Part shown: one piece after another, positions 2,415-15,520 of the stretch
How positions within the stretch are numbered: position 1 is the first letter of the stretch
How the letters are laid out: each line of letters begins with the position of its first letter
IMG/VR virus record: IMGVR_UViG_3300035156_000206
Location: 1-64,000 of that record
Length of the DNA stretch: 64,000 bases
Direction: 5' to 3' (one strand)
The notes under the pieces: model-generated
Seen by the model: only the letters and a program-made list of their open reading frames with translations
Database searches by the model: none
Told to the model about the DNA's origin: nothing
Position numbers and translations under genes: made by a program

Positions 2415-2426
2415 TCAATCTCCAAA

Positions 2427-2474: not shown

Positions 2475-2476
2475 TG

Positions 2477-2553: not shown

Positions 2554-2563
2554 CACATACAAC

Positions 2564-2585
2564 AAAGGACCCGAAGGTCCTTTTT
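2564..2585 (-). terminator. Terminator hairpin, same as 1392
   Basis: AAAGGACC-CGAA-GGTCCTTTTT. Confidence 0.8.
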
Positions 2586-2586
2586 A

Positions 2587-2841: not shown

Positions 2842-2877
2842 GTATCTCTTTCTGACGAGTGGAACTACTAAGGAAAC

Positions 2878-2952
2878 TGGATGCGGGAGGACGAATCGAA
2901 CGTCCGGGGCTTGGCTTATGAGACCTAGTTTGCCACCAACGACATTCCCGCA
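2878..2952 (-). tRNA. tRNA-Met/fMet-like (CAT), atypical
   Basis: TGCGGGA/TCCCGCA acceptor, CT-CAT-AA, TTCGATT T-loop, CCA; mismatch in anticodon stem and weak D-stem. Confidence 0.7.
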
Positions 2953-2960
2953 CTGAAACT

Positions 2961-3036
2961 TGGTGCCCTCAGCAGGATTCGAACCCGCGACCCCCTGATT
3001 ACAAATCAGGTGCTCTACCAGCTGAGCTATAAGGGC
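2961..3036 (-). tRNA. tRNA-Thr (TGT)
   Basis: canonical cloverleaf, TT-TGT-AA loop, CCA. Confidence 0.95.
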
Positions 3037-3052
3037 GAAACTTGTATTACTT

Positions 3053-3129
3053 TGGTGCCACGAGAGGGACTCGAACCCCCAACCTCCGGCTTCGTAGGCC
3101 AGCGCTCTATCCAGTTGAGCTATCGAGGC
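3053..3129 (-). tRNA. tRNA-Arg (ACG)
   Basis: canonical cloverleaf, CT-ACG-AA loop, CCA. Confidence 0.95.
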
Positions 3130-3146
3130 AGACTGCTATTTAGTGC

Positions 3147-3269
3147 TTACCACAACTTAGCAACAAAATGGGTCACAATCCATATCACAGCAATTGCACC
3201 AACAATGGCAGTACCACCCGCAATCACAATCACCATCTCAATTGCAGTAAAGCCGTTTTGCTGATTCAT
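3147..3269 (-). CDS. 40-aa type IV prepilin-like peptide
   Basis: Hand-translated MNQQNG|FTAIEMVIVIAGGTAIVGAIAVIWIVTHFVAKLW; class III signal motif; own promoter at 3302-3330. Confidence 0.75.
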   Translation of the reverse strand: MNQQNGFTAIEMVIVIAGGTAIVGAIAVIWIVTHFVAKLW

Positions 3270-3301
3270 CTTGCTCTCGCTGTTTGTTAACCGATGAAGA
3301 C

Positions 3302-3330
3302 AGTATACGGTGGCTTCATCAGTTAGTCAA
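3302..3330 (-). promoter_or_regulatory. sigma70-type promoter for prepilin-like ORF and tRNA cluster
   Basis: TTGACT-17-TATACT inside an inverted repeat. Confidence 0.75.
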
Positions 3331-3339
3331 CAGTTTTCT

Positions 3340-3609
3340 CTACAGCTTCACCCACTCATTGTAGATCTCTTCTGCCTCTGCCTTGATGGAGGCATCAATG
3401 TCCTCGTCCGTCATATCTGCAGTTCGGTCATCGTCCCAGATGGAGTACAGCTCAGTAGCAATAGTGTTCAAAGCTGTCAGCTTCGCATCCGGATCTTTGA
3501 TGTTGATGGCCAGCTCAGGCATATCACGAAGAGTATCTTCTTCACAGCTCTGGTTGTGAACTGCACCAATCAGTGCAGACTTGAACACGCGGAATGTACT
3601 GTTTGCCAT
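3340..3609 (-). CDS. Hypothetical protein
   Basis: start moved to MANSTF after GAGGAG RBS and repeat promoter. Confidence 0.8.
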   Translation of the reverse strand: MANSTFRVFKSALIGAVHNQSCEEDTLRDMPELAINIKDPDAKLTALNTIATELYSIWDDDRTADMTDEDIDASIKAEAEEIYNEWVKL

Positions 3610-3620
3610 TTCATTCTCCT

Positions 3621-3666
3621 CATCAGTTAATACATTCATTATACTGACTTTTGGAAAAATGTCAAC
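3621..3666 (-). promoter_or_regulatory. Early promoter+leader repeat (variant)
   Basis: TTGACA-17-TATAAT...AACTGATGAGGAG. Confidence 0.85.
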
Positions 3667-4397
3667 TAGGCTTTACGCATCACAAACAGAGTCATCGTCT
3701 TGTCTGGAATCTGTTGCAGTTTGTCCTGCTTCAGTTTCCATTGCTCCATGCCGGCAGGCGTCAGGCCCGAAGGTGCTGTACGAGGCAGGGGACGTGCAGA
3801 CCACAACTTGTCATCTGGCAGGTTGCTACCGTTGTAGACGAACGGTTTGCCATTTGCGTCTGGCATTGGGACACCATCAACAATCACATTGATGACATAG
3901 CCACGTGCACCAGCGGCGAGCTTCTTCCACAACTCAGCACCACCTTGGTATTGGGTGTTGTCGCTGATGATCGTCAAGCCCATCTCAACGAGGGCAACGT
4001 ACAGCATCGCACCGTAGCCACCACGAGCCATCTTCGGATCATTTGCAACGACGAGGTCGACCTGCACCGCACCTGGCAATTTAAGGCCCGGATTGCTGTT
4101 GCTGATCATCTGCTCTTTAAAGTCCAGCGTCACGTAGACGGCTGCACCAGCGACATTGTCTGCAGGACGAGTACCGCGCTTACCAATGAATGCTCCGCTG
4201 TGGTCTTGGCGAATGTAGACGACGTAGTTCGGGTCGTCCTTCACCAGCTTGAATTCATCGGCCAAGGTCCGATCGCTAAAGAAGTGATCGAAGCTGCTGG
4301 TATCCATTTGGAGCTTTTTTGGTTTGCCATCGGCATCTTCAGGGGCGTATGGCATCTCTTTGAGCAGGTTCTCGTTAAGTATTTGGTCTAATCGCAT
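3666..4397 (-). CDS. Late protein with GNAT-like motif A and N-terminal ILNE, possible internal head protein
   Basis: 243 aa; MRLDQILNE; ARGGYGAMLY; TAAATA at 4420-4425. Confidence 0.7.
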   Translation of the reverse strand: MRLDQILNENLLKEMPYAPEDADGKPKKLQMDTSSFDHFFSDRTLADEFKLVKDDPNYVVYIRQDHSGAFIGKRGTRPADNVAGAAVYVTLDFKEQMISNSNPGLKLPGAVQVDLVVANDPKMARGGYGAMLYVALVEMGLTIISDNTQYQGGAELWKKLAAGARGYVINVIVDGVPMPDANGKPFVYNGSNLPDDKLWSARPLPRTAPSGLTPAGMEQWKLKQDKLQQIPDKTMTLFVMRKA

Positions 4398-4418
4398 TTG
4401 GGTTCCTTTGTTATGGGC

Positions 4419-4718
4419 TTATTTAGCCTCGAACTGAGACAAGAACTCCAGGCAGTCCTTCAAGCCATCACGGCCGACGAACACAATATGATCTTGATCT
4501 TCGGGGCCATAGACAACGAGGATGTTGCATTCGTCCATGTCGAGGCTCTGGCGACCATTACGATCCCCGTACACCCAGTGGCGACCATAGGCACCTGCTT
4601 TGGTGTTGATGAGCTCTTTGATCTCGTCATCATCGTATACCTTGTCCTGCGAGCCATGCGTGACGGCACCGAACACTTTAACCTCAGACAATGGAGGTGG
4701 GCTGTAGATGGTAATCAT
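4419..4718 (-). CDS. Hypothetical protein
   Basis: start moved to MITIYS after repeat leader. Confidence 0.75.
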   Translation of the reverse strand: MITIYSPPPLSEVKVFGAVTHGSQDKVYDDDEIKELINTKAGAYGRHWVYGDRNGRQSLDMDECNILVVYGPEDQDHIVFVGRDGLKDCLEFLSQFEAK

Positions 4719-4727
4719 TGAATGCCT

Positions 4728-4776
4728 TTCGTCAGTTGATATTCCTATTATACTGACTTTCTTACAAAAAGTCAAC
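4728..4776 (-). promoter_or_regulatory. Conserved early promoter+leader repeat
   Basis: TTGACT-17-TATAAT...AACTGACGAAAGG. Confidence 0.9.
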
Positions 4777-4793
4777 TGACGTAGGCTTAAAAG

Positions 4794-5087
4794 TTATGTC
4801 GCATCCGATGTGCGTCTTTGTGGCATTCTTGAGACCAGTTCTTCGAACCAGCCTGGGACGCGCTTGTAGTTGATGTACGCGGCAATGTGCTTGGGATAAA
4901 CTTGCTCCAGCTTTGCCAGGTCATCTGCATCAGCAATCCAGATCAACTCCCAGAGGGCGTTGTTGAATTTGTCTGCTGTGCCGTAGTGCTTGCATTTGAT
5001 TAGGGATAACTCTCCCTCGTCCAGATCGATGTCTGGCTTAGCATCCTCAGGACGCTGCTCTTCCTTAGGATCACCAATAATGTACAT
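4794..5087 (-). CDS. Hypothetical protein
   Basis: 97-aa ORF; GGAGG RBS; TTGACA-17-TATAGT promoter near 5120-5148. Confidence 0.8.
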   Translation of the reverse strand: MYIIGDPKEEQRPEDAKPDIDLDEGELSLIKCKHYGTADKFNNALWELIWIADADDLAKLEQVYPKHIAAYINYKRVPGWFEELVSRMPQRRTSDAT

Positions 5088-5166
5088 CTTGATACCTCCG
5101 TTGTGAGTGTCAGTAAGTCACTATACTGTGTTACGGAGGAAATGTCAACGATCACATCGCAAAAGG

Positions 5167-5186
5167 AAAAGGACCCGAAGGTCCTT
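5167..5186 (-). terminator. Terminator hairpin, same as 1392
   Basis: AAGGACC-CGAA-GGTCCTT with A run. Confidence 0.8.
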
Positions 5187-5191
5187 GTCTC

Positions 5192-5368
5192 TCAATCCAT
5201 TTCAGACTGAGTCAGTTTATCGATTGCTTGGTTGTAGCTTCGGCGCATCGCACGCATGAAAGCTTTGCGTCCTTTACGGCCGCTTGGTGCACAGCATGAG
5301 CAGTGCAAACCTCCACCACCGAGCTTGGCATGGCAGGTTTTGAGAAAGTGTTTCTTTTCGCGAATCAT
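5192..5368 (-). CDS. Small basic CxCC protein
   Basis: start moved to MIREKK after GGAG RBS; GGGGLHCSCC motif. Confidence 0.65.
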   Translation of the reverse strand: MIREKKHFLKTCHAKLGGGGLHCSCCAPSGRKGRKAFMRAMRRSYNQAIDKLTQSEMD

Positions 5369-5420
5369 GGTTAGGGTCTCCTTATAATAACCTAATGCAT
5401 GGTACGCTCCTTTCTTTTGT

Positions 5421-5617
5421 TGGGCAGGACTAGATGGAATCGCACCACCGACCTCTTGGTTAAATACCAAGCGCTCTACCATCACGGCCGTTGGTTGGAG
5501 CACCCAGGTAACGTTACCTCCCGGGCGAGTCTGACGTCGTTTCGTGATGTTGGACATTCACATTAACGAGGAGGCCTCCCCGTCGCAGCCGCAGTCCACA
5601 AACTGAGCTATAGTCCC
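5421..5617 (-). ncRNA. tRNA-like RNA (UUU anticodon) with 120-nt insertion in the D-loop
   Basis: GGGACTA/TAGTCCT acceptor, GCTC/GAGC D-stem, CTTGG/CCAAG anticodon stem, GGTGG/CCATC T-stem; insert 5481-5600. Confidence 0.8.
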
Positions 5618-5629
5618 ATTGATCTGTAA

Positions 5630-5719
5630 TGGCGGAAACGGTGGGATTCGAACCCACGGGCCCTGTTACGGGCCGCCGGTTTAGCAAACCGGTGCCTTAA
5701 GCCTCTCAGCCACATTTCC
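5630..5719 (-). tRNA. tRNA-Ser (GCT)
   Basis: class II cloverleaf, TT-GCT-AA, long variable arm, CCA. Confidence 0.95.
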
Positions 5720-5736
5720 GAACAACTATTTATTCG

Positions 5737-5827
5737 TGGCGGAAGCGGTGGGATTCGAACCCACGGAGCCCTTTCGGACTCGGCAGTTTTCAAGACTGCT
5801 GCCTTAAACCAGCTCGGCCACGCTTCC
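5737..5827 (-). tRNA. tRNA-Ser (TGA)
   Basis: class II cloverleaf, CT-TGA-AA, CCA. Confidence 0.95.
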
Positions 5828-5846
5828 TTAGTTAAGCACTACGTTA

Positions 5847-5938
5847 CCCGGAGGGAACTAGACGGATCTCCACTCTGACTGCCTTTCGGCACCTGGCGAT
5901 TTCCAAAGAGTCCGAACCTACCCTAGCCGATAACTGGG
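5847..5938 (-). ncRNA. Candidate rod-like RNA with GAAA tetraloop
   Basis: nested helices GCTAG/CTAGT, CGGA/TCCG, ACTCT/AGAGT, TGCC-GAAA-GGCA; no ORF; first unit after promoter. Confidence 0.5.
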
Positions 5939-5998
5939 AGAAATTGTTGCCATCTCCTTCAATAAATCAGAGGCCTACGCAGCGCTTCACTAATGACA

Positions 5999-6026
5999 AT
6001 TATACGCATTGCTACGTAAATGTCAA
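5999..6026 (-). promoter_or_regulatory. sigma70-type promoter for the Ser-tRNA cluster
   Basis: TTGACA-16-TATAAT. Confidence 0.75.
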
Positions 6027-6115
6027 CAGTTACTTTTCTGGATCGAGCCTACATACGATCCAGATCACAATGAGCTTGATCACTGTAACCAAGCTCACAA
6101 TTTCGAAGAACGTCA

Positions 6116-6862
6116 TTACAGACCGTGCTTGATGATCAGGCCGAACACTTCGTCCAGGGACGAGACCTCATTCACCTTGATGCTGACCTGGCGTCCGCCG
6201 GCCATCGGGAACGTCATTTCGTAGCGCGGGATGTGCGTGGCTTCGCCGATGCGATCCATGTGGTTGGGCAACTGTTGAACCGGTGCCTTTGCAACAGGAG
6301 CAGCATGCGCGCCAGAGATGGTTTCCTTGTTCTCGGCCTTGCGAGCGAGACGTTCAGCCTTCTTCGATGCCGATTCAGCTTCTTCGGCCGAGCGGTGCAT
6401 ATTCTTCTGGTACGACACTTTGCTCTTGGCCGATGTGATGGCGCGCTGATGAGTGCCGAGTTGTTCTGGCGACATGTCAGCCGTTGGAATCGCTTGCAGT
6501 GCCAGCAGGGCCGTTTGTGCTGCTTCCATCTTCGGCTTGATCTCTGCTGCGGTGGTTGTTTTGCGTGCCATGGTATTTCCTTTCGTCATTTGAGTGGAGT
6601 GTGTCCAACCCGTTGGAGGTGTGTACTCGGTCTCTGTTCCAAGTTCACTATTAATCACGATACCCAATGTATCGCGTACATGCTCCCGCGCCTTTGTCAG
6701 GTTCGGGAAAGGCTGATCGTCTACCGTCCAGCGCTTCTCCGGATGAGGCATACGTACCCCATCCGAAGTCTCCCCACGAACAATGAACTGGTCAATGTCC
6801 GGGAAGGAGCCATAGCGCTTATTGGGAAACAACCTTATTGCTGTAGTCGCACTGTTCTTCAA
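6116..6862 (-). CDS. Hypothetical protein with possible internal start MARKTT at 6571
   Basis: 248-aa ORF; promoter TTGATT-17-TATAAT near 6910-6938; internal RBS TGACGAAAGGA. Confidence 0.75.
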   Translation of the reverse strand: MKNSATTAIRLFPNKRYGSFPDIDQFIVRGETSDGVRMPHPEKRWTVDDQPFPNLTKAREHVRDTLGIVINSELGTETEYTPPTGWTHSTQMTKGNTMARKTTTAAEIKPKMEAAQTALLALQAIPTADMSPEQLGTHQRAITSAKSKVSYQKNMHRSAEEAESASKKAERLARKAENKETISGAHAAPVAKAPVQQLPNHMDRIGEATHIPRYEMTFPMAGGRQVSIKVNEVSSLDEVFGLIIKHGL

Positions 6863-6933
6863 TATATCCCCTCGTCAGCTATTTTGATCAACGCTTAGTT
6901 GATAAGGCTATTATACTGAAATTTGGAAATTAA

Positions 6934-7620
6934 TCAACTCTTTTTTGTAAGATTGTGGTAATAGGTAGACGCACCAGCTTCTGTCAATCCTGCATCACGA
7001 ACTAGCTTCTTGATGACTGTCTTGCGGCTGCGGTCTTTGTTGCGCTTGATGATCCAGATGGCTTTGTCCTTCTTGGTACCAAATGCAATCTTCTCAGGCA
7101 TAGAGGTAGGAACATGGACTGGCTCCGAAGGAACGAGTCTGGTTTTGCAAGCAACACATTGGTACTTGTCCAACATGATCTTGCGGCGCATGATGCTGGC
7201 GTAGACGTGACTATCGTCGTTGCAAGCACAAAGGAACTTGTAGGTGGTGAACTGACGTTTGCTGATGTTCGTATCCAACCCATGACACCGATCAGGCTTC
7301 AGCCCCATCAGGATCATAATTGCCTTCCATTCCTTACCATGCGCTTGGGTATCATGTCCGTGAATGTGCTCTGTGATGACGTGAGCAACCTCATGAGGTA
7401 CAATTTGGTATAGGAACGCAGAAGGGTACGCACTCAGCAATATGGGATCGAAATTGACATGGTAGTGGATACCACGAGCCCAGCCAGCAGTCGTGTAGCT
7501 ACGCTGGTAGGTGATGATAAGAGGAGGAAGGTTTAAATCAGGATACACTGCCTCCACGCGTGCGATTGAGTCGAGGACGACAGCACGAACTTGGTTGTGG
7601 AGGTCAGGAGGGATGTTCAT
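6934..7620 (-). CDS. SprT-like zinc metalloprotease with Cys cluster and C-terminal repeat-family domain
   Basis: HEVAH (HExxH), HGKEWK, CxC...CxxC; C-terminal GLTEAGASTYYHN. Confidence 0.85.
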   Translation of the reverse strand: MNIPPDLHNQVRAVVLDSIARVEAVYPDLNLPPLIITYQRSYTTAGWARGIHYHVNFDPILLSAYPSAFLYQIVPHEVAHVITEHIHGHDTQAHGKEWKAIMILMGLKPDRCHGLDTNISKRQFTTYKFLCACNDDSHVYASIMRRKIMLDKYQCVACKTRLVPSEPVHVPTSMPEKIAFGTKKDKAIWIIKRNKDRSRKTVIKKLVRDAGLTEAGASTYYHNLTKKS

Positions 7621-7644
7621 GTCCCTATTTATGGGCAACTAATG

Positions 7645-7751
7645 CCATATGGGGTGAGTTGTGGGCCCGTAATTCGCGCTTCATCGCTAGCGCCGCCAAA
7701 GGCGGCAAAGCTTGGTTCGCACTTTTCTGTTTGCACAACCCACCCCATATG
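7645..7751 (-). ncRNA. Candidate ~106-nt structured RNA
   Basis: about 18-bp closing stem CATATGGGGTG-GGTTGTG/CACAACT-CACCCCATATG plus inner hairpins. Confidence 0.65.
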
Positions 7752-7758
7752 ACACTAT

Positions 7759-7898
7759 GTAGATGACTAAAGGGTGGCCACCGAAGGCGCCTGCGAGAAG
7801 GGAAGCCTGACGAAAGGAGGAGGTCTCAGCCCGCCTTGGGGGGAAGGTGGATCTCTACTTTACGCAAGCGGCCTCGGCGCCACTCTTTAATCGACTAC
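7759..7898 (-). ncRNA. 140-nt sRNA with C-rich loops, antisense to early leader/SD
   Basis: promoter 7905-7933 predicts +1 near 7898; ends pair; hairpin contains ACCUCCUCCUUUCGUCAG. Confidence 0.75.
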
Positions 7899-7904
7899 AA
7901 GATC

Positions 7905-7933
7905 ATTTTATCACATACATCGTCAAAAGTCAA
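7905..7933 (-). promoter_or_regulatory. sigma70-type promoter of the 140-nt sRNA
   Basis: TTGACT-17-TAAAAT. Confidence 0.8.
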
Positions 7934-7949
7934 CGATTAATTCTGGGAT

Positions 7950-8213
7950 GAAGATTCAACTAGAGCTACTGCTGATGCAGGACTTAGGTAGCTACTCCCA
8001 GTCGTACACCAGCCTTCGAGTCCATCTCCGCTGACTCGCGCTCGATCCGGCATCCCCTGTCAGGGCCCTTCAACTGATTGGCTGCATGAGTGGTCTCAGT
8101 GTTCACGAACTGGTGCTCTATGCGCGGCACTCAACGAGCCGCAGAACGCGCGTTCATTAGTACTAAGCCCTACAGGCTGACAGGCCTGTTCACTCACTTC
8201 TAGTTGAACCTTC
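7950..8213 (-). ncRNA. Candidate 264-nt multi-helix RNA
   Basis: 15-bp closing helix GAAGGTTCAACTAGA/TCTAGTTGAATCTTC; CCTGTCAG/CTGACAGG; several hairpins; no credible ORF. Confidence 0.7.
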
Positions 8214-8322
8214 TTTATGAGCATGTCTCTATATAATGGCATGCGCATAAAGAAGATCCCTCTTCTTCCTAGTTTCCGTTCTAGGTTATGGGGCACTCCC
8301 CATTCGGTAACTGCAAGTTATT

Positions 8323-8475
8323 TGGTACCGGGGGCAGGCCTCGAACCTGCAAAAAAGCAAACTCAACACGGCCGTGCCTTGTTCGCCCTTACAACCCATG
8401 GCCTCCCCACTCACCTAGTCTAGCTTCACTGAGCAGGTACTAACACAGGGCGTCTACCACTTTCGCCACCCCAGC
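8323..8475 (-). ncRNA. tRNA-Leu-like RNA with about 60 extra nt in the anticodon/variable region
   Basis: GCTGGGG/CCCCGGT acceptor, Leu-type D-arm GGCGAAAGTGGTAGACGC, GCAGG-TTCGAGG-CCTGC T-arm, ACCA; 153 nt. Confidence 0.75.
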
Positions 8476-8483
8476 ATAACTCT

Positions 8484-8645
8484 TTAGTCGACGAGGTCAC
8501 CCGCGTCAACAAAACTTTCACCCCAACGAACCATCAGGCCAAGCAGGAAGCCAACAACGGCACCGATAACAGGCTCTGCCCAGACATAATGTCCAACGAC
8601 GGCACCGAGAGCAGTACTCAACACCAACAGCAAAAATGTCAACAT
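8484..8645 (-). CDS. Small membrane protein, 53 aa
   Basis: hand-translated MLTFLLLVLSTALGAVVGHYVWAEPVIGAVVGFLLGLMVRWGE...; AAGGAG RBS. Confidence 0.65.
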   Translation of the reverse strand: MLTFLLLVLSTALGAVVGHYVWAEPVIGAVVGFLLGLMVRWGESFVDAGDLVD

Positions 8646-8661
8646 GCACTACTCCTTAAAA

Positions 8662-9059
8662 TGGGTCCCCCTTTCGATGACAGGGACTAGTGAACCTTTC
8701 GGCTCAGTAGCGGGGGATTATTTCAACCCTGCAAAGTTAGTTAGGCGTAAGCCGCTACTTTGAATTGTGAGTCGTTTGCATTTACATGCTTGCATCTTTT
8801 CGCCTTACGGCCGAGGATCGCTTCTCGTGTTGTCAACCTACGGTTATCTCACCACGTCGAAACCAGGTCGCCCCCATCAGCTGCACTTTCAGGTCTATGT
8901 CTGGTGTACCAGTCCTGAGAATTGATGTTATCTCATCTTCGAAAGCGCAGTTGGTGGAGGCGGCGGGAATCGAACCCGCGTCCGCAATGCCTTCACTTTG
9001 GCATCTGGATAGGTCTTACCCTACCCCACAACAATGTATCCGTTGATTTCTCAACTGAT
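8662..9059 (-). ncRNA. ssrA: Circularly permuted (two-piece) tmRNA
   Basis: acceptor piece ending GGTTCGATTCCCGCCGCCTCCACCA at 8952 is transcribed before GGGGGCGACCTGGTTTCGAC at 8875; tag ANDSQFKVAAYA at 8741-8779; outer ends approximate. Confidence 0.9.
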
Positions 9060-9065
9060 GAAGCC

Positions 9066-9094
9066 ATTATATAGACTTCTTCAGTTGAAGTCAA
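9066..9094 (-). promoter_or_regulatory. sigma70-type promoter of the tmRNA/ncRNA operon
   Basis: TTGACT-17-TATAAT inside inverted repeat. Confidence 0.8.
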
Positions 9095-9103
9095 CAGTTA
9101 ATT

Positions 9104-9439
9104 TCACAAGAGCTGATCAGCCAGCTTGACCAACTCGGCACGGTCCAGTTCAAACTCCGGACGCAGACGCTCCTGTTTCGACGATTGTGCCTCAGGCCAG
9201 TATGCCAGCTCATGAGGAGTCTTCATGGTCGAATGGTGAATCCCAGCCAAGCGGTTCCACTTCAACTCGGTTGGATGGAAGACCGAGATGATCGCATGCG
9301 ACTGGAAGTCATACGAGTCGCTCTTGATCGAGATGGACAACTTGTGCCCCTTCATTTCGAAAACTTGATGCAGCGTCAATGACTGACGCGCTTTAAGAAT
9401 TTCGTCCTGAATCATTTTGATCTTGGATGCTTTTGCCAT
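9104..9439 (-). CDS. Hypothetical protein
   Basis: 111 aa; downstream of repeat promoter, AAGGAG. Confidence 0.8.
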   Translation of the reverse strand: MAKASKIKMIQDEILKARQSLTLHQVFEMKGHKLSISIKSDSYDFQSHAIISVFHPTELKWNRLAGIHHSTMKTPHELAYWPEAQSSKQERLRPEFELDRAELVKLADQLL

Positions 9440-9455
9440 TTTGTTCTCCTTGGGT

Positions 9456-9503
9456 TTCGTCAGTTGATATAGCTTATTATACTGACTTTTGGAAAAATGT
9501 CAA
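9456..9503 (-). promoter_or_regulatory. Conserved early promoter+leader repeat
   Basis: TTGACA-17-TATAAT...AACTGACGAAA. Confidence 0.9.
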
Positions 9504-9955
9504 CTGGCTTTCCAAGGGTTAGCTTTGGGAATCACTTCGCCATTCTTGACCTTGTAGAACTCGCTACCTTCCTGGCGGTACAGTGGACTGACCTTGGCGT
9601 CAGCTATTTCAGCATTCGCTAAATCGTCCCAGAGAGCTTCCAGGTGCTCGTAGTAGTTCTTCCGGTGATGCTTGCGGTACAGCCGGTTGACGTCTTCCAT
9701 CGTGAAGCCGTGCTTCCGCATGTACGGACCCAACTGGTCAATTGGGTCGCCACCGTCGCAGGCGTAGCCGAGGGCATTATCGGCAGCCTGATAGAGAGCC
9801 TGCAACTTCAGGTCATTGATGGCCTTGCGTTCAGCAGCGGTCTGCCTCTTAGGCGCATCATAGCTTTCGCGCCACGCTTCCACTCCCGATTGGTTCAGGT
9901 TGCGGAAGCGTTTGTAGGTGCCCGATTTATTTGGGACTTGAACGGATGAGCTCAT
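9500..9955 (-). CDS. Hypothetical protein
   Basis: start moved to MSSSVQ, ATGA overlap with upstream stop. Confidence 0.75.
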   Translation of the reverse strand: MSSSVQVPNKSGTYKRFRNLNQSGVEAWRESYDAPKRQTAAERKAINDLKLQALYQAADNALGYACDGGDPIDQLGPYMRKHGFTMEDVNRLYRKHHRKNYYEHLEALWDDLANAEIADAKVSPLYRQEGSEFYKVKNGEVIPKANPWKAS

Positions 9956-10146
9956 GGCGCAGTGTAGGTGAACAAGCACATTGCTTGTTGTTGAAGGACG
10001 GAACGACCACGGTCGCAATTGTTGATCTTGGTGACTGCCGCAATGGCAACCAAAGGATCGTCAAACGCGACGGTGATAGTATGGACAGCAACCTGACCAC
10101 CATTTGGGGTCATGGTAGTGGTCACCAGGATTTGGAATTGGCTCAT
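9952..10146 (-). CDS. Hypothetical protein
   Basis: 64 aa; ATGA overlaps on both sides. Confidence 0.65.
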   Translation of the reverse strand: MSQFQILVTTTMTPNGGQVAVHTITVAFDDPLVAIAAVTKINNCDRGRSVLQQQAMCLFTYTAP

Positions 10147-10715
10147 GCCCAGATCCCCTTGCGCAGGTTGTATTCGTACGTCGTCGCACCTGGCTTCGAC
10201 AACTGGAGTTCTTTCATGAACAGCTCGATGATCTGGTGCTTGTCAGGCATGTTCGCAATGTTCTGCTTGTACAGTGCGATACAGCGGTCTTTCTTCGACA
10301 TGCCACTCGAACGAGCGATGCGTGGCTTCTTGGCTGTGGTACCGAGTTCTTCAGCCGCAATGACTGCTTCAGCGTGCTTCTCGGCAATCACGTCAGGATT
10401 GACCCATGGGTTCTTTGCGAGGAACTCACCAGCCTTCTTCTGCGCCAGAGCAATGGCTTGGTCAATCTCCATGTACTCTTTCATGTTGTAGAAGCGGACC
10501 GATTCCTGGATCAGGTAGCCAAACACCAATTCGGCAACCTTAACATCCTTCGTTTCCACATCCTGCTCCGTGAGCTCCTTGATGTAGGCATCGAAGTTGC
10601 ACTTCAGACCTGCAGCACGCTCAATCAGGTTGTCGCGGACGAAGTACTGTGCCGAAACAAAACTGTCAGTTGGAATGCCCATCGCTTTGATACGTTCAAT
10701 GATTACTGGTACCAT
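10143..10715 (-). CDS. Protein with C-terminal repeat-family domain
   Basis: start moved to MVPVII after AAGGAG; LSKPGATTYEYN motif; promoter at 10753-10780. Confidence 0.8.
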   Translation of the reverse strand: MVPVIIERIKAMGIPTDSFVSAQYFVRDNLIERAAGLKCNFDAYIKELTEQDVETKDVKVAELVFGYLIQESVRFYNMKEYMEIDQAIALAQKKAGEFLAKNPWVNPDVIAEKHAEAVIAAEELGTTAKKPRIARSSGMSKKDRCIALYKQNIANMPDKHQIIELFMKELQLSKPGATTYEYNLRKGIWA

Positions 10716-10821
10716 GATGACTTCTCCTTCGTCGTTGGATTCAATATAGACAATTATACTCACTTTTGGAAAAATGTCAACAGTTGCTTTCCAAATAAAT
10801 AAAGCATCATAGGAGCACACA

Positions 10822-11073
10822 ATGGCAATAGAACCATCCGGCATCATATATTTGTTGAAGAAGATCGAGGTAGCGGCAGATATCGAAACGACACTGGCAG
10901 AGATTTATATCAACCTGCCAACATGCATCAATCGCGCAATTGGAACCCTCCAGTGTACTCAATTAGAAAACGAGTACCGAGGGGTCATGCAGAAACTGAA
11001 GGTCGACTTTGAGTTCGACCTTCATCAAGCTTTCAAAGACCAGGTTGGAAAGATCCTGGCCCGTCCACGTTAA
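10822..11073 (+). CDS. Hypothetical protein, probably late
   Basis: 83 aa; AGGAG RBS; TAAATA at 10796-10801. Confidence 0.65.
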   Translation: MAIEPSGIIYLLKKIEVAADIETTLAEIYINLPTCINRAIGTLQCTQLENEYRGVMQKLKVDFEFDLHQAFKDQVGKILARPR

Positions 11074-11606
11074 TGGACTGTGGTGTTCGGCGGCACTGAA
11101 GCTTCTGGCTCACCATTCTCGGCCCGCTCCTGAGCCGCCCGTCCGGCCATCATCAATGATACGATGGCTGCGACGAGTGGATGCTGCTCGCGCTCCTCTT
11201 CATCATCGTCACCATGAACCATTTGGCAACCAGGGCACCAGCCTTCAGGCTTGTCTTCATCGCCGGCCTTGGTTTTGATCTCGGCCTTCTTGCGAGCCAC
11301 GAATTCGTCAACAGCACCCTTCGTGATGATCTTGTGCTCTTCCAGGATCACGAGCATCTCGCCCATGACTTCGGACACGCCAGCAATCAAGCCAAGTGGC
11401 ATCGCAATTTGTGCGTGCCCGATTTGGTTCATGGTAAGGCCAGGTGGCGCCTGTTCCAGGATGTGTTCCATCGCATCAGCAAACTTCTCATGCAACGCAG
11501 CGGCCCCGGCCGCAACATGCAAGATGCGTTCTTCTTTTGACATACCAGCGAGGAACTCCTCGTGGTCCTTTTTCTGCTCAGCTTGCTTCTCTTTGGTCGT
11601 TGCCAT
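11070..11606 (-). CDS. Hypothetical protein
   Basis: 178 aa; GACGAAAGGG leader; promoter near 11637-11664. Confidence 0.8.
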   Translation of the reverse strand: MATTKEKQAEQKKDHEEFLAGMSKEERILHVAAGAAALHEKFADAMEHILEQAPPGLTMNQIGHAQIAMPLGLIAGVSEVMGEMLVILEEHKIITKGAVDEFVARKKAEIKTKAGDEDKPEGWCPGCQMVHGDDDEEEREQHPLVAAIVSLMMAGRAAQERAENGEPEASVPPNTTVH

Positions 11607-11737
11607 TTTATTCCCTTTCGTCTAAGTGATGTGTTCATTATAGACAGAATTTGTGTAAAGTCAACAGTAATATTGAGATAGCATTATTAAGCAAAAGCTA
11701 TTATAATGAGGGAACTATACAACTTCGGGAGTTTCCC

Positions 11738-11992
11738 ATGTCGCATGCTCTAGTGACCCTCATTGATGAGGTTTTGAAAGACGCTGAGGTTCATGATGTT
11801 GAGGTGTCAATCCAAGTCGACACCGGATCGAAGACGATGGGTGCATCTTATAAGGACGATGTTGGGATGTGCCGCTACTACGTCAATGATATCGATGCCC
11901 TGTGGTATGAGATCCAGAAGGAACTGGAAGGCGAACAAACCTCAATGATCGACGCTTTTTGGTCAATCTTGAATACCGTATATAAGATTTAA
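11738..11992 (+). CDS. Hypothetical protein
   Basis: start moved to MSHALV after GGGAG. Confidence 0.7.
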   Translation: MSHALVTLIDEVLKDAEVHDVEVSIQVDTGSKTMGASYKDDVGMCRYYVNDIDALWYEIQKELEGEQTSMIDAFWSILNTVYKI

Positions 11993-12130
11993 ATGAAAAA
12001 CCATTGAGAAATCTCAAGGGCCTTAGCAGATTACCGTTGATTTCTGATATTTCCACCGTATGATTAAGTTATCAACTCTACCGCACTCAATAGTGGGAGC
12101 GGGGAAGTTACTAACCCAAGGAGAATCAAG

Positions 12131-12463
12131 ATGGCAACCTCGAATCGTAATCACGGCTCTAAAGCACCATTGGTCCCTGAGCCACAGCACACCGGCCGCA
12201 ACGCGGAATCGTTCTCGACGCAGCAAGGCAGCAACAAAGCAGCCATTGCCCGCAAAATCTTTAACGAGATCGGTACCGACCAGCCACGCAAGGCCGTCAT
12301 CGAGCGCTTCCAGTCCGAAGCACACCTGACCCCTGCAGGCGCGGCAACCTACTACCAGAACATGAAAAAAGAAGCCGGCCTCGTCGCAGTTGGCGGCCCA
12401 GGCAACACACGCGCGCAAAACAATGCGCCGGCTGAAGGCGGCGCAGCAACGGCCAAGAAATAA
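12131..12463 (+). CDS. Small basic protein, repeat-family domain
   Basis: 110 aa; LTPAGAATYYQN motif; AAGGAG RBS; terminator follows. Confidence 0.8.
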   Translation: MATSNRNHGSKAPLVPEPQHTGRNAESFSTQQGSNKAAIARKIFNEIGTDQPRKAVIERFQSEAHLTPAGAATYYQNMKKEAGLVAVGGPGNTRAQNNAPAEGGAATAKK

Positions 12464-12509
12464 TTCACTTACCGGTGATTATCTGGCCCCCTTTATGGTG
12501 GCCATGTTT

Positions 12510-12536
12510 GGGGAGACTTCGGTCTCCCCCTTTTTT
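12510..12536 (+). terminator. Rho-independent terminator
   Basis: GGGGAGAC-TTCG-GTCTCCCC then T6. Confidence 0.9.
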
Positions 12537-12545
12537 ATCCCTACT

Positions 12546-12593
12546 GTTGACTTTCTTCCAAATGTCAGTATAATGAAATCATCGACTGACGAA
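12546..12593 (+). promoter_or_regulatory. Conserved early promoter+leader repeat, plus-strand copy
   Basis: TTGACT-17-TATAAT GAAATCATCGACTGACGAAAGGGAG. Confidence 0.9.
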
Positions 12594-12606
12594 AGGGAGA
12601 TACAAA

Positions 12607-12972
12607 ATGAAATTTAGTGACCTCACAAGCGATGTTGCACGGGTAGATTATCTGAAGGCTCAGCTGACCCAGGATGACCGGTTGATCATGCGTTGCCTAT
12701 TGGCAATCTACAATAACCAGACCTTGGATGAACAAAGCTCCAAGACTGTTAACAAGCACAATGGCATCGGCTTTAAGTCGATGGATGCGAAGATCCTCAC
12801 GGAGTATGTACAGACGGCAGAGCGTCGTCGTGTGACTGAGGCTCTGGAGAACAAGAATGTTGAATTCTGCTTGGAGCGTGTACTGTCCGAGAAGCAGGCA
12901 GCATTCCTGCGCCGTGCAATGCCAAAGTATGCCCGTCAACTTTTGAAGGTAATCAAGGAGAAACAAAAATGA
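12607..12972 (+). CDS. Conserved phage hypothetical protein
   Basis: 121 aa; LLAIYNNQT.DEQ...HNGIGF pattern. Confidence 0.8.
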   Translation: MKFSDLTSDVARVDYLKAQLTQDDRLIMRCLLAIYNNQTLDEQSSKTVNKHNGIGFKSMDAKILTEYVQTAERRRVTEALENKNVEFCLERVLSEKQAAFLRRAMPKYARQLLKVIKEKQK

Positions 12973-13250
12973 ACATCACTACCCAGGTAAGTCGTTTGGA
13001 TTCCAAATCTCGCAAAGTTGGTGGCGAGATGCAGCAAAGCACTGCCCACACCATCCAGGTTGATGGCAAAACCTTCCTTCATGGAGGACCTAAGGTAATT
13101 GTGACTGAGTACCCGAATGGGAAGACGACGATCACGGCCACCGAAGCATATGGTCGCATCTACTTGGTAGATGGGAAGGTACATCAATTTGCCTCCGTAC
13201 AAGCAGCAGCAGAAGCGCTGGTTGCAAAGGAGCTGAAACAAACTCCTTGA
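12969..13250 (+). CDS. Hypothetical protein
   Basis: 93 aa; ATGA overlap; AAGGAG. Confidence 0.75.
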   Translation: MNITTQVSRLDSKSRKVGGEMQQSTAHTIQVDGKTFLHGGPKVIVTEYPNGKTTITATEAYGRIYLVDGKVHQFASVQAAAEALVAKELKQTP

Positions 13251-13293
13251 TCTTCAGGACCTACCTCCTCTACAATGCTCCACTTAGTTCCAT

Positions 13294-13301
13294 TATAAAT
13301 A
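13294..13301 (+). promoter_or_regulatory. T4-like late promoter
   Basis: exact TATAAATA ahead of a gene-free hairpin-rich stretch. Confidence 0.6.
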
Positions 13302-13719
13302 TGGGACTACAGTGGATGTTTGTTTTTCGGGCATTATGTTTCCACTATAAAAACATAAAGAACGACGGGCCTTGGAGTAGAGCCCAATAACTACTAACCA
13401 GGTGGGGGATGTGCGAGCGACCCAATCCAACCGCTGTCGTAGCGGCGATTACAAACAGAAATGGGCAGACGGTTTATACATGATTTAGTTCATGCCGGCG
13501 TGACGGTCTCGACGATACAGAGACATGCTGATAAAACACCTTACGACCAAGATTGATCACTTCCAATCTTGAACTAGTTCTTTAGGACAGATTCCTTCTT
13601 CCAGGTTGAATTAATTTAAATTATTCCTTCCTGTTTTTGAAAAGCTCTGACCGGGTCCTAGGCTCATGTCCTGTACCCCTACGGGTTGACAAAAACCTAA
13701 GACTTCAGTATGATGCAAA

Positions 13720-14085
13720 TCAATCCTCCATGTCCTTCCATACCCCGAACTCCACTACCGAGATAGGTTGGCCGTACTCAGTCGCCGATTTGTGCCAGTG
13801 CTCGATCAGACTAACAGGCACATCAGGATATGCAGCCACTACCTGCTCAATAATCAAACTATCAAACAAGTCCTGACGCATCTGGGTCAGATACAGATTG
13901 GCCGTATCCAGAGCCAATGCCTCATCGTCAAATGCCTCACAGGTGTAACCCTTGGCCTGACCGAATGTGCTGGAGGACGACACACGATATGTGGTCCCAG
14001 CTGCACCCTCATACTTCGTGCAAGTAACATGCATCACGGTGTCACCAAACACGTGACTAAATTGCAACAGGGTTGTGGTTTTCAT
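13720..14085 (-). CDS. Hypothetical protein
   Basis: 121 aa; repeat promoter, AAGGAG. Confidence 0.8.
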   Translation of the reverse strand: MKTTTLLQFSHVFGDTVMHVTCTKYEGAAGTTYRVSSSSTFGQAKGYTCEAFDDEALALDTANLYLTQMRQDLFDSLIIEQVVAAYPDVPVSLIEHWHKSATEYGQPISVVEFGVWKDMED

Positions 14086-14095
14086 CTTTTACTCC

Positions 14096-14143
14096 TTCGT
14101 CAGTTGATGTAGTCATTATACTGACTTTTGGAAATTTGTCAAC
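14096..14143 (-). promoter_or_regulatory. Conserved early promoter+leader repeat
   Basis: TTGACA-17-TATAAT...AACTGACGAAGGAG. Confidence 0.9.
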
Positions 14144-14153
14144 GGGATGGGAA

Positions 14154-14336
14154 TTAGACGTTGTCCGCAGGACCAATGATCTGGAAGCCACCTTCAGATA
14201 CCTCAAACTCACATTCGCCATCTGTCAGGTCATCCGAGTAGCTAATGTAGTTGACCACGGAGTCCAACTCCTCATCCGTGCAACCATCCAACAACGCCTT
14301 CAGCTCACGCAGGGTCTTGAAAGTTCCTTCAGCCAT
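14154..14336 (-). CDS. Small acidic hypothetical protein
   Basis: 60 aa; repeat promoter, GGAG. Confidence 0.7.
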   Translation of the reverse strand: MAEGTFKTLRELKALLDGCTDEELDSVVNYISYSDDLTDGECEFEVSEGGFQIIGPADNV

Positions 14337-14347
14337 GATATTCTCCA

Positions 14348-14391
14348 GTAGTTGATGTAGTCATTATACTGACTTTTGGAAATTTGTCAAC
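14348..14391 (-). promoter_or_regulatory. Early promoter repeat (variant leader)
   Basis: TTGACA-17-TATAAT GACTACATCAAC. Confidence 0.85.
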
Positions 14392-14509
14392 GGGAACAAA
14401 TACCAAACGATTTAAACGCGTTATACGCGATTTGTTTTACAATCGGTAAGCAAATGCGATCGACGAAGGAAAACCGTGCAAACGTTGATCTGAACGGTTT
14501 CCGATGTGT

Positions 14510-14785
14510 TTACGTGAGGAGGACAGATAGCGGATCGATGGTCTCGATGTTCAGCTTTGTGAACACGCGTTCCATGAGCTCATCGGTGAGGTCTGGTTGA
14601 TCGGCTCCCCACATGCGGTACACTGTCCAGAAGCGGCCATTGCTTTCTTTCAGGCCGTTGATCAGCCACTCGCAGATCTGGTGCATCAAGTAGCGAGCTT
14701 CTGGTGTGTACTCTGGTGCACCGATCAGTCCGGTCTGGACATCACGGAACACCGCAATCACGTCGTCCTTGCAAGTGGCGATCAT
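14510..14785 (-). CDS. Hypothetical protein
   Basis: 91 aa; ATGA overlap. Confidence 0.75.
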   Translation of the reverse strand: MIATCKDDVIAVFRDVQTGLIGAPEYTPEARYLMHQICEWLINGLKESNGRFWTVYRMWGADQPDLTDELMERVFTKLNIETIDPLSVLLT

Positions 14786-15342: not shown

Positions 15343-15355
15343 TTTGTATCTCCGT

Positions 15356-15518: not shown

Positions 15519-15520
15519 GG

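What the first reader, a model, noticed from the sequence alone, without database searches (positions are those of the whole stretch)
8662..9059. Phage-encoded circularly permuted two-piece tmRNA
Seen: order is promoter, acceptor piece (CCA at 8952), a 76-nt self-pairing spacer (CUGCGCUUUC/GAAAGUGCAG), then the coding piece from GGGGGCG at 8875. Cross-piece helix-2 pairings are present (CGUGGUG/CAUUGCG, GUAGGUU/GACCUAU). Established: permuted tmRNAs occur in alphaproteobacteria, some betaproteobacteria and some cyanobacteria. No smpB lies in the window. Inference: a host clue, and a way to control ribosome rescue during infection.
Basis: partly seen in the sequence, partly recalled or inferred. 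Interest (0 to 1): 0.75.

Follow-up and report, generated by a model that had tools for sequence, protein, structure and literature searches.

The report
Jumbo phage two-piece tmRNA gene
This is a real circularly permuted (two-piece) tmRNA gene in an uncultured 292-kb soil-crust phage, but such genes are already catalogued in related phages, so it is a divergent new member of a known kind whose only odd feature is a tag two residues longer than usual.

Summary
ARAGORN calls a permuted tmRNA on the minus strand at 9044..8650 with tag ANDSQFKVAAYA. Rfam tmRNA_permuted scores 108 bits against a cut-off of 47.

The record is a jumbo myovirus from a biocrust metagenome. It has 29 tRNAs and no SmpB, AlaRS, RF-1/ArfB or integrase. 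The gene sits behind TTGACT-17-TATAAT, one of 23 such sites in the window against 0.06 expected.

It subtypes nearest the beta-proteobacterial model but falls below its cut-off (79.8 bits, cut-off 84).

- The second "cross-piece" helix (GACCUAU/GUAGGUU) is not conserved. A local hairpin and an outer UGUUGU/ACAACA helix are.
- The "host clue" is weak. Beta-type permuted tmRNAs occur in phages of Xanthomonas and Ralstonia, and other permuted ones in phages of Bordetella and an acidobacterium.
- The kind is known. Buchholz 2022 lists 53 two-piece phage tmRNAs, including XacN1 and PHB04.

Unusual points are a two-codon tag extension (UAA position reads UAC, then GCC UAA), shared in form with one other huge phage, and two extra hairpins. 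Expression and processing are untested. Interest is modest.

The parts
9066..9094 (-). Sigma-70-type promoter: -35 TTGACT (9094..9089), 17-nt spacer, -10 TATAAT (9071..9066). The predicted transcription start is near 9059.
   Evidence: (11/12 match). It is one of 23 exact TTGAC-N16-18-TATAAT sites in the window against 0.06 expected, 20 of them in the first 20 kb and 17 of those on the minus strand.
8952..9059 (-). Acceptor piece. Its 5' end is not determined; its 3' end is the encoded CCA at 8952. It contains the outer P2 strand UGUUGU (9033..9028), an inserted local hairpin (9026..9007), the P2a strand CAUUGCG (8989..8983), the T arm (8979..8963), the acceptor 3' strand CGCCUCC (8962..8956) and ACCA (8955..8952).
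9007..9026 (-). Lineage-specific local hairpin GGGUAGG-GUAAGA-CCUAUCC, inserted between the outer P2 strand and P2a.
   Evidence: A hairpin sits at the same position in L007 (UGCGUAG/CUACGCG) and L129 (GGUUUGG/CCAAAC) with different sequences that still pair. It is absent from L004-type relatives.
8876..8951 (-). 76-nt intervening segment, predicted to be excised. It is closed by an 11-bp stem (8950..8940 with 8891..8881) that stacks on the acceptor stem, and 5 nt (CUGAU) precede G1.
   Evidence: The position of the stem is conserved and its sequence covaries in 46 of 51 relatives.
8658..8875 (-). Coding piece. It contains the acceptor 5' strand GGGGGCG (8875..8869, with G3 pairing U70), the D-loop analogue ACCUGGUUUCGA (8868..8857), P2a CGUGGUG (8856..8850), outer P2 ACAACA (8833..8828), the P3 hairpin (8827..8812), an extra GCC-GUAA-GGC hairpin (8811..8802), the tag frame and a 3' tail. 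The 3' end is not determined.
8741..8779 (-). Tag reading frame: resume codon GCA (8779..8777), 12 codons giving ANDSQFKVAAYA, and stop UAA (8743..8741). Codons 11-12 (UAC GCC, 8749..8744) are an extension beyond the position where the beta consensus and the nearest relative L129 stop.
   Evidence: There are no sequence variants at about 22x DNA depth.
8658..8687 (-). Weak terminator-like element: hairpin GUCCCU...GGGGGAC (8687..8665) followed by UUUU (8661..8658). The consensus scan did not call it a terminator.
   Evidence: no terminator found; the fold.
8484..8657 (-). Downstream 53-aa hydrophobic ORF (8645..8484) with Shine-Dalgarno AAGGAG (8657..8652). It may be co-transcribed with the tmRNA precursor. 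It is context, not part of the tmRNA.

Best explanation
This is a genuine circularly permuted tmRNA (ssrA) gene carried by an uncultured jumbo myovirus of about 292 kb from a biocrust.

Host RNA polymerase probably transcribes it early, from one of the phage's many sigma-70-type early promoters, as a precursor of about 400 nt. The order is acceptor piece, 76-nt intervening segment, coding piece.

A conserved 11-bp stem in the intervening segment stacks on the acceptor stem and presents the two tRNA-like ends. Host RNase P would cut before G 8875, and 3' trimming would stop at the encoded CCA (8952), releasing two RNAs. These stay together through the 7-bp acceptor stem, helix P2a (CAUUGCG/CGUGGUG) and an outer P2 helix (UGUUGU/ACAACA).

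Host AlaRS would charge the RNA (G3:U70, discriminator A). Host SmpB and EF-Tu would deliver it to stalled ribosomes, because the phage encodes neither SmpB nor AlaRS. Translation would resume at GCA 8779 and add ANDSQFKVAAYA.

What is shown: the gene, its parts, its phage setting, its family relations and the absence of partner genes. What is inferred by analogy with the Caulobacter two-piece tmRNA: transcription, cleavage into two pieces, charging, tagging and any benefit to the phage.
For: - Detection: ARAGORN permuted call with tag. RF04321 at 108.1 bits against a 47-bit cut-off, E = 4e-20. RF01850 aligns over its full length at 79.8 bits, E = 2e-24, the best of its clan.
- Structure: all tRNA-like-domain helices are intact and covary with L007 and L129, and G3:U70 is kept in all three. 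The resume context GUAAAU-GCA-AAC-GAC is shared with about 50 viral relatives.
- Spacer: the closing stem is conserved in position and covaries in 46 of 51 relatives.
- Promoter: an 11/12 match that belongs to a promoter family enriched from 0.06 expected to 23 sites.
- Phage setting: an IMG/VR viral record; tail sheath, tail fibre, thymidylate synthase, NAD ligase, topoisomerase II and phage-only PHROGs; 29 tRNAs. The nearest tail sheaths are in Stenotrophomonas, Xanthomonas and Ralstonia jumbo phages, three of which carry permuted tmRNAs.
- Assembly: DNA coverage is even at about 22x with no variants.
- Partner genes: no SmpB, AlaRS, RF-1/ArfB or integrase in the record.
Against: - There is no expression or processing evidence. 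No RNA run holds this gene; only the conserved T-arm words match, plus two short contigs from relatives.
- It scores below the curated cut-off of the beta model (79.8 against 84).
- The second stem of pseudoknot PK1 could not be established.
- No canonical terminator was found, so the 3' end is uncertain.
- The tag ends AAYA. The usual ending is xAA, seen in 49 of 61 distinct viral tags here, so coupling to ClpXP-type proteolysis is uncertain.
- The record is 84% complete, so a phage smpB in the missing part cannot be excluded.
Confidence: 0.82

Rival explanations
1. It is a decoy or inhibitor. The RNA mainly titrates host SmpB (or AlaRS/EF-Tu) and so damps host trans-translation rather than tagging proteins, as reported for the tRNA-like-domain-only RNA of mycobacteriophage DS6A.
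For: The phage brings no SmpB, so its tmRNA must compete for the host's. PMC4131195 and PMC11915505 report that a TLD-only phage RNA inhibits endogenous tmRNA in E. coli. The tag terminus is atypical.
Against: The complete mRNA-like part is kept: the resume context, an open 12-codon frame and a stop. Its first six residues follow the family pattern ANDS(Q/H)F. A pure decoy would not need this and would be expected to decay, as DS6A's has.
Confidence: 0.1
2. It is a rescue RNA with an altered degron. It rescues ribosomes, but the two-residue extension (AA to AAYA) uncouples tagging from ClpXP or redirects tagged proteins to another protease or adaptor.
For: The beta consensus stop aligns with UAC, followed by GCC UAA. 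L007, from a 281-kb phage that shares only about 17 distant genes with this one, has the same form, AAC GCC UAA, giving AANA. These two endings are unique among 61 distinct viral tags. There are no variants in the reads. It is established that ClpX reads the last residues and the free carboxylate of the ssrA tag, and that Mycoplasma tags ending FAFA switched to Lon (from my own knowledge of Flynn 2001 and Gur & Sauer 2008; not read here).
Against: The sister sequence L129 stops at the normal place, so the extension may be a neutral, recent read-through that arose twice. The penultimate residue differs between the two phages (Y against N). No protease or adaptor gene that would go with it was found; the single ClpP-family hit may be a prohead protease (its function was not tested). 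The last residue is still Ala.
Confidence: 0.2
3. It is not a phage gene at all: either a cellular contig wrongly called viral, or a host ssrA fragment picked up at an integration site.
For: ssrA is a common integration site, and prophages often carry 3' ssrA fragments (PMC9004378; PMC12595487).
Against: The record encodes tail sheath, tail fibres and many phage-only families. The gene is complete, has its own phage-type early promoter and lies in the phage tRNA array. No tyrosine integrase was found. Two scans of 185,579 species' genomes for its 5' motif found nothing.
Confidence: 0.02

Closest known systems
Phage-encoded permuted tmRNAs of jumbo and large myoviruses: Xanthomonas phage XacN1, Ralstonia phage RsoM2USA, Xanthomonas phage Xoo-sp13 and Bordetella phage PHB04, plus about 50 IMG/VR contigs with ANDS... 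tags
   Same: They share the gene order, the closing stem in the spacer, the resume context and an ANDxxF-type tag. They lie among phage tRNA genes and come without SmpB. The tail sheaths of XacN1, Xoo-sp13 and RsoM2USA (not PHB04) are among the nearest to this phage's. XacN1 and PHB04 are already listed as 'Permuted' in Table S1 of PMC9004378.
   Different: Core identity is only about 60-66%. This tmRNA, with L007 and L129, has an extra hairpin in the acceptor piece. It and L007 also have an extra tetraloop hairpin after P3. The tag is 12 residues ending AAYA, not 10 ending xAA. It falls below the RF01850 cut-off that XacN1 and RsoM2USA pass.
Betaproteobacterial two-piece tmRNA (Rfam RF01850 beta_tmRNA; Sharkady & Williams 2004)
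   Same: It is the best-scoring subtype model and aligns over its full length, promoter region included. The tag aligns codon for codon with the consensus ANDEHFAMAA.
   Different: It scores 79.8 bits, under the 84-bit cut-off. The terminal hairpin of the model is not matched. Insertions lie in the acceptor piece and after P3, and the stop codon position is read through. It sits in a virus, not a cell.
Caulobacter crescentus two-piece tmRNA (Keiler, Shapiro & Williams 2000), the experimentally characterised case
   Same: Both have a permuted gene, a precursor with an intervening segment, and two pieces predicted to be held by the acceptor stem and P2.
   Different: It belongs to the alpha lineage with a 14-residue tag, and it is cellular with its own SmpB. 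Processing and function are shown there and only inferred here.
OM43 phage Melnitz and pelagimyophage two-piece tmRNAs (PMC9004378)
   Same: They are phage-borne permuted tmRNAs placed behind an early promoter, with a tmRNA type that does not match the host's.
   Different: Those are alpha-type and carry a glutamine riboswitch in the 3' domain. No riboswitch or other Rfam family is detected here.
One-piece tmRNAs of mycobacteriophages (Bxz1 group) and Bacillus phage G; the TLD-only RNA of phage DS6A (PMC4131195)
   Same: They are tmRNA genes carried by large phages without SmpB.
   Different: They have the standard, unpermuted gene order. DS6A lacks the tag frame, whereas this gene has a complete one.

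Membership tests
Permuted (two-piece) tmRNA, Rfam RF04321 | Score at or above the curated gathering cut-off of the covariance model | tested here: met
   108.1 bits against 47, E = 4e-20, model positions 1-213 of 213.
Permuted (two-piece) tmRNA, Rfam RF04321 | Circularly permuted order: the 3' tRNA-like half with CCA lies upstream of the 5' tRNA-like half and tag frame, with an intervening segment between them | tested here: met
   CCA at 8954..8952, a 76-nt segment, then G1 at 8875.
Permuted (two-piece) tmRNA, Rfam RF04321 | Alanine identity: G3:U70 in a 7-bp acceptor stem, discriminator A, and a T arm with a GGUUCGAUUCC-type loop | tested here: met
   GGGGGCG/CGCCUCC pairs 7/7 with G:U at position 3. 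ACCA is present, and the T arm pairs 5/5. The same holds in L007 and L129, with compensatory changes.
Permuted (two-piece) tmRNA, Rfam RF04321 | Cross-piece P2 helices that hold the two RNAs together | tested here: met
P2a pairs 7/7 and outer P2 6/6, and both are conserved in L007 and L129.
Permuted (two-piece) tmRNA, Rfam RF04321 | Resume codon in the conserved context, followed by a short tag frame ending in a hydrophobic, Ala-rich C-terminus | tested here: inconclusive
   The resume context and frame are met. The C-terminus is AAYA, not xAA, and only L007 (AANA) is comparable among 61 distinct viral tags.
Permuted (two-piece) tmRNA, Rfam RF04321 | Pseudoknot PK1 upstream of the resume codon | tested here: inconclusive
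   The P3 hairpin CGAG/CUCG is present. I looked for the second stem by eye and found only 3-4 possible pairs. The covariance models do not model it.
Permuted (two-piece) tmRNA, Rfam RF04321 | The precursor is cleaved into two stable RNAs | not testable with these tools
   No RNA run holds the locus.
Permuted (two-piece) tmRNA, Rfam RF04321 | Works with SmpB in trans-translation | not testable with these tools
   There is no SmpB in the record or in relative G001, so host SmpB would be needed. The host is unknown.
Betaproteobacterial two-piece tmRNA, Rfam RF01850 | Score at or above the curated gathering cut-off | tested here: not met
   79.8 bits against 84. It is the best of clan CL00001. 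Many phage relatives pass, scoring 92-174 bits. I therefore file it as nearest to this lineage but not as a curated member.
Phage-encoded gene (not cellular) | The record carries virion and phage-only genes, and the gene uses phage regulatory signals | tested here: met
   Tail sheath, tail fibre and phrog_1735, an IMG/VR viral record and the phage early-promoter family.

The most novel reading that the evidence does not exclude
The two-codon extension of the tag gives ...AAYA here and ...AANA in L007, an unrelated-looking 281-kb phage. It may be a selected change that removes or re-targets the ClpXP degron. These phages would then rescue stalled ribosomes without sending the products to the host's usual ssrA proteolysis, or would send them to a different protease.

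A second, more likely point is that beta-type permuted tmRNAs form a lineage that circulates among large phages whatever form of tmRNA the host has.
Probability: 0.2. Interest if true: 0.55.

Novelty: new member of a known kind. Interest (0 to 1): 0.3.

Why it matters
- **Annotation.** This adds one more case, from a soil crust, of large phages carrying their own ribosome-rescue RNA together with a near-complete tRNA set.
- **Annotation gaps.** GenBank records of cultured relatives (XacN1, RsoM2USA, PHB04) leave the same gene unannotated; for Xoo-sp13 I did not check the annotation at the locus.
- **Host prediction.** The form of a phage tmRNA is a poor guide to the host.
- **A cheap test.** The one feature worth an experiment is the extended tag end. 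Fusing the tag, with and without the last two residues, to a reporter would show whether phage tmRNAs can separate ribosome rescue from proteolysis.

Tried and rejected
- **Relatives in the genome search.** They cannot be drawn for a virus. 'of' needs a G handle. An E. coli locus gave only a W handle with no relatives. I could not sample cellular permuted tmRNAs or check host tmRNA forms, so those statements rest on the literature.
- **First viral pattern.** A 40-70 nt gap excluded the 76-nt spacer and found nothing.
- **Metagenome scan.** A scan for ANDS(Q/H)F tags gave 5 loci, none with the extension.
- **Global alignment.** A MAFFT plus RNAalifold alignment of 57 joined sequences was too heterogeneous to recover P2. 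I replaced it with explicit helix checks in the three closest sequences.
- **Energy folding.** The minimum-energy cofold recovers the acceptor stem and T arm but not P2a. Energy folding alone is not a guide here.
- **tmRNA tree.** The tree has weak support. The group of this tmRNA with L129 and L007 has SH-aLRT 82-91, so whether the tag extension arose once or twice is open.
- **Kinship of G000 and G001.** They share only about 17 ORFs at 23-68% identity with no synteny. They are not close kin.
- **RNA evidence.** There is none for this locus.
- **The 840-nt ORF-poor stretch downstream.** It has no Rfam hit, no BLAST match in the loci held or in the phage collection, and no GOLLD match, although XacN1 has GOLLD in the same relative position.
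- **Sharkady & Williams 2004** is not held.

Full report

Yes. ARAGORN finds one tmRNA in the window, flagged as permuted, on the minus strand at 9044..8650, with tag ANDSQFKVAAYA. Rfam's tmRNA_permuted model (RF04321) matches 9011..8747 at 108.1 bits against a 47-bit cut-off, E = 4e-20 for the whole window.

ACCA lies at 8955..8952, the intervening segment is 8951..8876 (76 nt), and GGGGGCG lies at 8875..8869.

The promoter TTGACT-17-TATAAT lies at 9094..9066, an 11/12 match. It begins 10 nt after the stop codon of the upstream ORF. That places the transcription start near 9059.

**2. Anatomy**

All coordinates are on the minus strand.

Acceptor piece:
- outer P2 strand UGUUGU, 9033..9028
- a local hairpin, 9026..9007
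- P2a strand CAUUGCG, 8989..8983
- T arm, 8979..8963
- acceptor 3' strand CGCCUCC, 8962..8956
- ACCA

Spacer: an 11-bp closing stem (8950..8940 with 8891..8881), then CUGAU before G1.

Coding piece:
- GGGGGCG, with G3 pairing U70
- D-loop analogue ACCUGGUUUCGA
- P2a strand CGUGGUG, 8856..8850
- outer P2 strand ACAACA, 8833..8828
- P3 hairpin, 8827..8812
- an extra GCC-GUAA-GGC hairpin, 8811..8802
- GUAAAU, then resume codon GCA at 8779
- twelve sense codons and stop UAA at 8743..8741
- a structured tail ending in a weak terminator-like hairpin (8687..8665) plus UUUU (8661..8658)

The consensus scan calls no terminator. A 53-aa hydrophobic ORF with a good Shine-Dalgarno sequence follows at once, so the 3' end is uncertain and read-through is possible.

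**3. Comparative support and one correction**

Pattern scans of IMG/VR brought in 142 viral loci. Of these, 117 carry a tmRNA, and more than 70 of those tmRNAs are permuted.

A small, weakly supported clade holds this tmRNA, L007 (a 281,566-bp contig, tag ANDSHFLQAANA) and L129 (a 132,836-bp contig, tag ANDSQFRAAA) (SH-aLRT 82-91). Core identity to any relative is only about 60-66%.

In these three sequences the acceptor stem, T arm, P2a and outer P2 all pair, with compensatory changes, and G3:U70 is kept.

In L007 and L129, however, no such partner exists. All three instead form a local hairpin at the same place with unrelated stem sequences: GGGUAGG/CCUAUCC, UGCGUAG/CUACGCG and GGUUUGG/CCAAAC. 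This hairpin is an insertion relative to L004-type relatives and the Rfam consensus.

In 46 of 51 distinct spacers there is a run of at least 7 pairs (median 11, against 5.8 for shuffled controls). It starts 0-1 nt after the CCA and ends 4-5 nt before G1, and its sequence differs freely between relatives. That is what a processing or presentation helix should look like.

**4. Setting**

The window is the first 64 kb of a 291,967-bp IMG/VR viral record rated 84% complete.

The record encodes a tail sheath, collagen-like tail fibres, thymidylate synthase, NAD-dependent ligase, topoisomerase II, an NAD-salvage pair and phage-only families. It has 29 tRNA genes, all on the minus strand, in a long array at 258-272 kb and shorter clusters at 2.4-5.8 kb, with the tmRNA just beyond the latter at 8.65-9.04 kb.

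It has no SmpB, AlaRS, RF-1/ArfB domain or tyrosine integrase. The one ClpP-family hit lies in a 271-aa ORF among the DNA-metabolism genes at 85-100 kb; I guess it is a prohead protease, but I did not test this.

The window holds 23 exact TTGAC-N16-18-TATAAT sites against 0.06 expected. Twenty are in the first 20 kb, 17 of them on the minus strand, and most share a long consensus. This is an early-promoter family read by host RNA polymerase, and the tmRNA promoter is a divergent member. Early transcription is therefore a reasonable inference.

The DNA comes from a biocrust metagenome. Coverage across the locus is even at about 22x with no variants.

**5. Which kind of permuted tmRNA, and does it point to a host?**

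Among the older subtype models, the betaproteobacterial one (RF01850) is the best. It aligns over its full length, but at 79.8 bits it is under the 84-bit cut-off. PMC11915505 recommends exactly this use of the older models for subtyping.

Most viral relatives pass that cut-off with 92-174 bits. They include the cultured Xanthomonas phage XacN1 (107.8 bits, two copies) and Ralstonia phage RsoM2USA (92 bits). This tmRNA, L007, L129 and Bordetella phage PHB04 do not pass.

The phage's tail sheath is nearest to those of Stenotrophomonas, Xanthomonas and Ralstonia jumbo phages, at 41-57% identity.

So this is a divergent branch of a beta-type permuted tmRNA lineage that is common in large phages. 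Those phages infect Xanthomonas and Ralstonia; other permuted tmRNAs sit in phages of Bordetella and even an acidobacterium (Tunturi_4). Melnitz carries an alpha-type tmRNA in an OM43 host (PMC9004378). The permuted form is therefore not a reliable sign that the host itself has a two-piece tmRNA.

That these hosts have one-piece tmRNAs is my own knowledge and the literature's three-clade statement. I could not test it here.

The best host guess is a beta- or gammaproteobacterium of the soil crust. It rests on the relatives of the phage and the ANDxxF style of the tag, and my confidence in it is low.

**6. What is unusual**

Aligned to the beta consensus tag (ANDEHFAMAA, then stop), the stop position reads UAC here and is followed by GCC UAA. 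This adds Tyr-Ala.

L129 stops at the normal place, with GCCUAA lying out of frame just downstream. L007 reads AAC GCC UAA, adding Asn-Ala.

Among 61 distinct viral tags, 49 end in AA and 6 in VA. Only these two end in YA or NA.

G000 and the L007 phage share about 17 distant ORFs and no synteny. The shared form is therefore either old and kept, or it arose twice. The tree cannot decide.

ClpX is known to read the last residues of the ssrA tag, so the change could alter the fate of tagged proteins. This is an untested idea, and I rate it at about 0.2.

The two extra hairpins (after outer P2, and after P3) are lineage-specific ornaments of unknown role.

**7. How it most likely works**

By analogy with the Caulobacter two-piece tmRNA, the steps would be:
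1. early transcription by host polymerase
2. folding of the precursor, so that the spacer stem stacks on the acceptor stem
3. RNase P cleavage before G 8875 and 3' trimming to the CCA at 8952
4. two RNAs held together by the acceptor stem and P2
5. alanylation by host AlaRS
6. delivery by host SmpB and EF-Tu
7. tagging with ANDSQFKVAAYA and release at UAA

The benefit to the phage would be to keep ribosomes free while host mRNA is degraded and phage messages dominate. That fits the phage's large tRNA set.

None of these steps is shown here. No RNA library holds the locus. Two short contigs in wastewater and soil RNA libraries are about 93-95% identical over 8762..8867. They come from relatives and prove nothing about this gene.

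**8. Rivals**

- An SmpB-titrating decoy is possible, because the phage must share host SmpB and a TLD-only phage RNA inhibits tmRNA. The intact and conserved tag frame argues for real tagging.
- A misclassified cellular contig or an att-site relic is excluded for practical purposes.

**9. Novelty and verdict**

Phage-encoded two-piece tmRNAs are known. PMC9004378 counted 53 among 133 unique phage tmRNAs, and its Table S1 lists XacN1 and PHB04 as permuted. PMC11915505 lists 79 phage tmRNA sequences. Huge phages with tmRNAs are noted in PMC7162821.

This is a new and rather divergent member of that kind. The host inference and one helix are not, and the interest was overrated.

Noticed in passing
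window 1-20000, mainly minus strand (e.g. 2021-2048, 3638-3665, 9476-9503, 15893-15920): A family of near-identical sigma-70-type promoters with consensus TTGACATTTTTCCAAAAGTCAGTATAAT. The window holds 23 exact TTGAC-N16-18-TATAAT sites against 0.06 expected. This marks an early-gene region read by host RNA polymerase.
   Followed up: partly
window 7640-7900, minus strand (promoter-like TTGACT-17-TAAAAT at 7933..7905): A 261-nt stretch folds at -123.7 kcal/mol, z = -7.2 against shuffles. It lies inside an ORF-poor region of about 840 nt (7640-8483) downstream of the tmRNA. It has no Rfam hit and no BLAST match in the phage collection or the loci held. It is a candidate structured non-coding RNA, or a long leader of the SprT-like gene at 6934-7638.
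   Followed up: partly
window 8323-8350, minus strand: A look-alike of a T arm, an acceptor 3' strand and ACCA (GCAGG-UUCGAGG-CCUGC, CCCCGGU, ACCA) with no matching 5' strand nearby. ARAGORN and the Rfam tRNA model are silent, and the region's fold is unremarkable (z = -0.4). It may be a decayed tRNA or tmRNA fragment.
   Followed up: partly
L170 2840-3253 (Xanthomonas phage XacN1, AP018399.1, about 38.6-39.0 kb; the terminal repeat should hold a second copy): A GOLLD RNA (RF02032, 227 bits against a 150-bit cut-off) lies about 950 nt downstream of XacN1's permuted tmRNA. That is the same relative position as the unexplained ORF-poor stretch in this window, which does not match GOLLD.
   Followed up: partly
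L146 (MF663786.1), L170/L173 (AP018399.1), L171 (MG752970.1), L172 (MN047793.1), L147 (PP885687.1): Permuted tmRNA genes are unannotated in the GenBank records of Bordetella phage PHB04, XacN1 (two copies), RsoM2USA and Tunturiibacter phage Tunturi_4. Xoo-sp13 also has a permuted tmRNA, but I did not check its annotation. In Tunturi_4 the tmRNA lies next to a gene annotated as an RF-1-domain release factor (ArfB-like). ARAGORN miscalls the RsoM2USA tag; by eye it reads ANDSRYAVAA.
   Followed up: partly
G000 2477-5827 and 258286-271723, minus strand: There are 29 tRNA genes in a long array at 258-272 kb and shorter clusters at 2.4-5.8 kb, near the two ends of the record. One has an irregular anticodon-loop call (268847-268922). 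The layout suggests a contig opened inside or near a repeat or a circular permutation point. XacN1 keeps its tRNAs and tmRNA in its terminal repeats (PMC5852040).
   Followed up: no
window 60035-63862, plus strand: An NAD-salvage pair: an NMN adenylyltransferase/Nudix fusion (450 aa) and a nicotinamide phosphoribosyltransferase (545 aa). The latter is about 50% identical to those of Ralstonia and Xanthomonas jumbo phages.
   Followed up: partly
window 8762-8867: Short contigs in a wastewater RNA library and a soil RNA library (164 and 151 nt) match the coding piece at about 93-95% identity. This hints that close relatives of this tmRNA are present, and perhaps transcribed, in other environments.
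   Followed up: no
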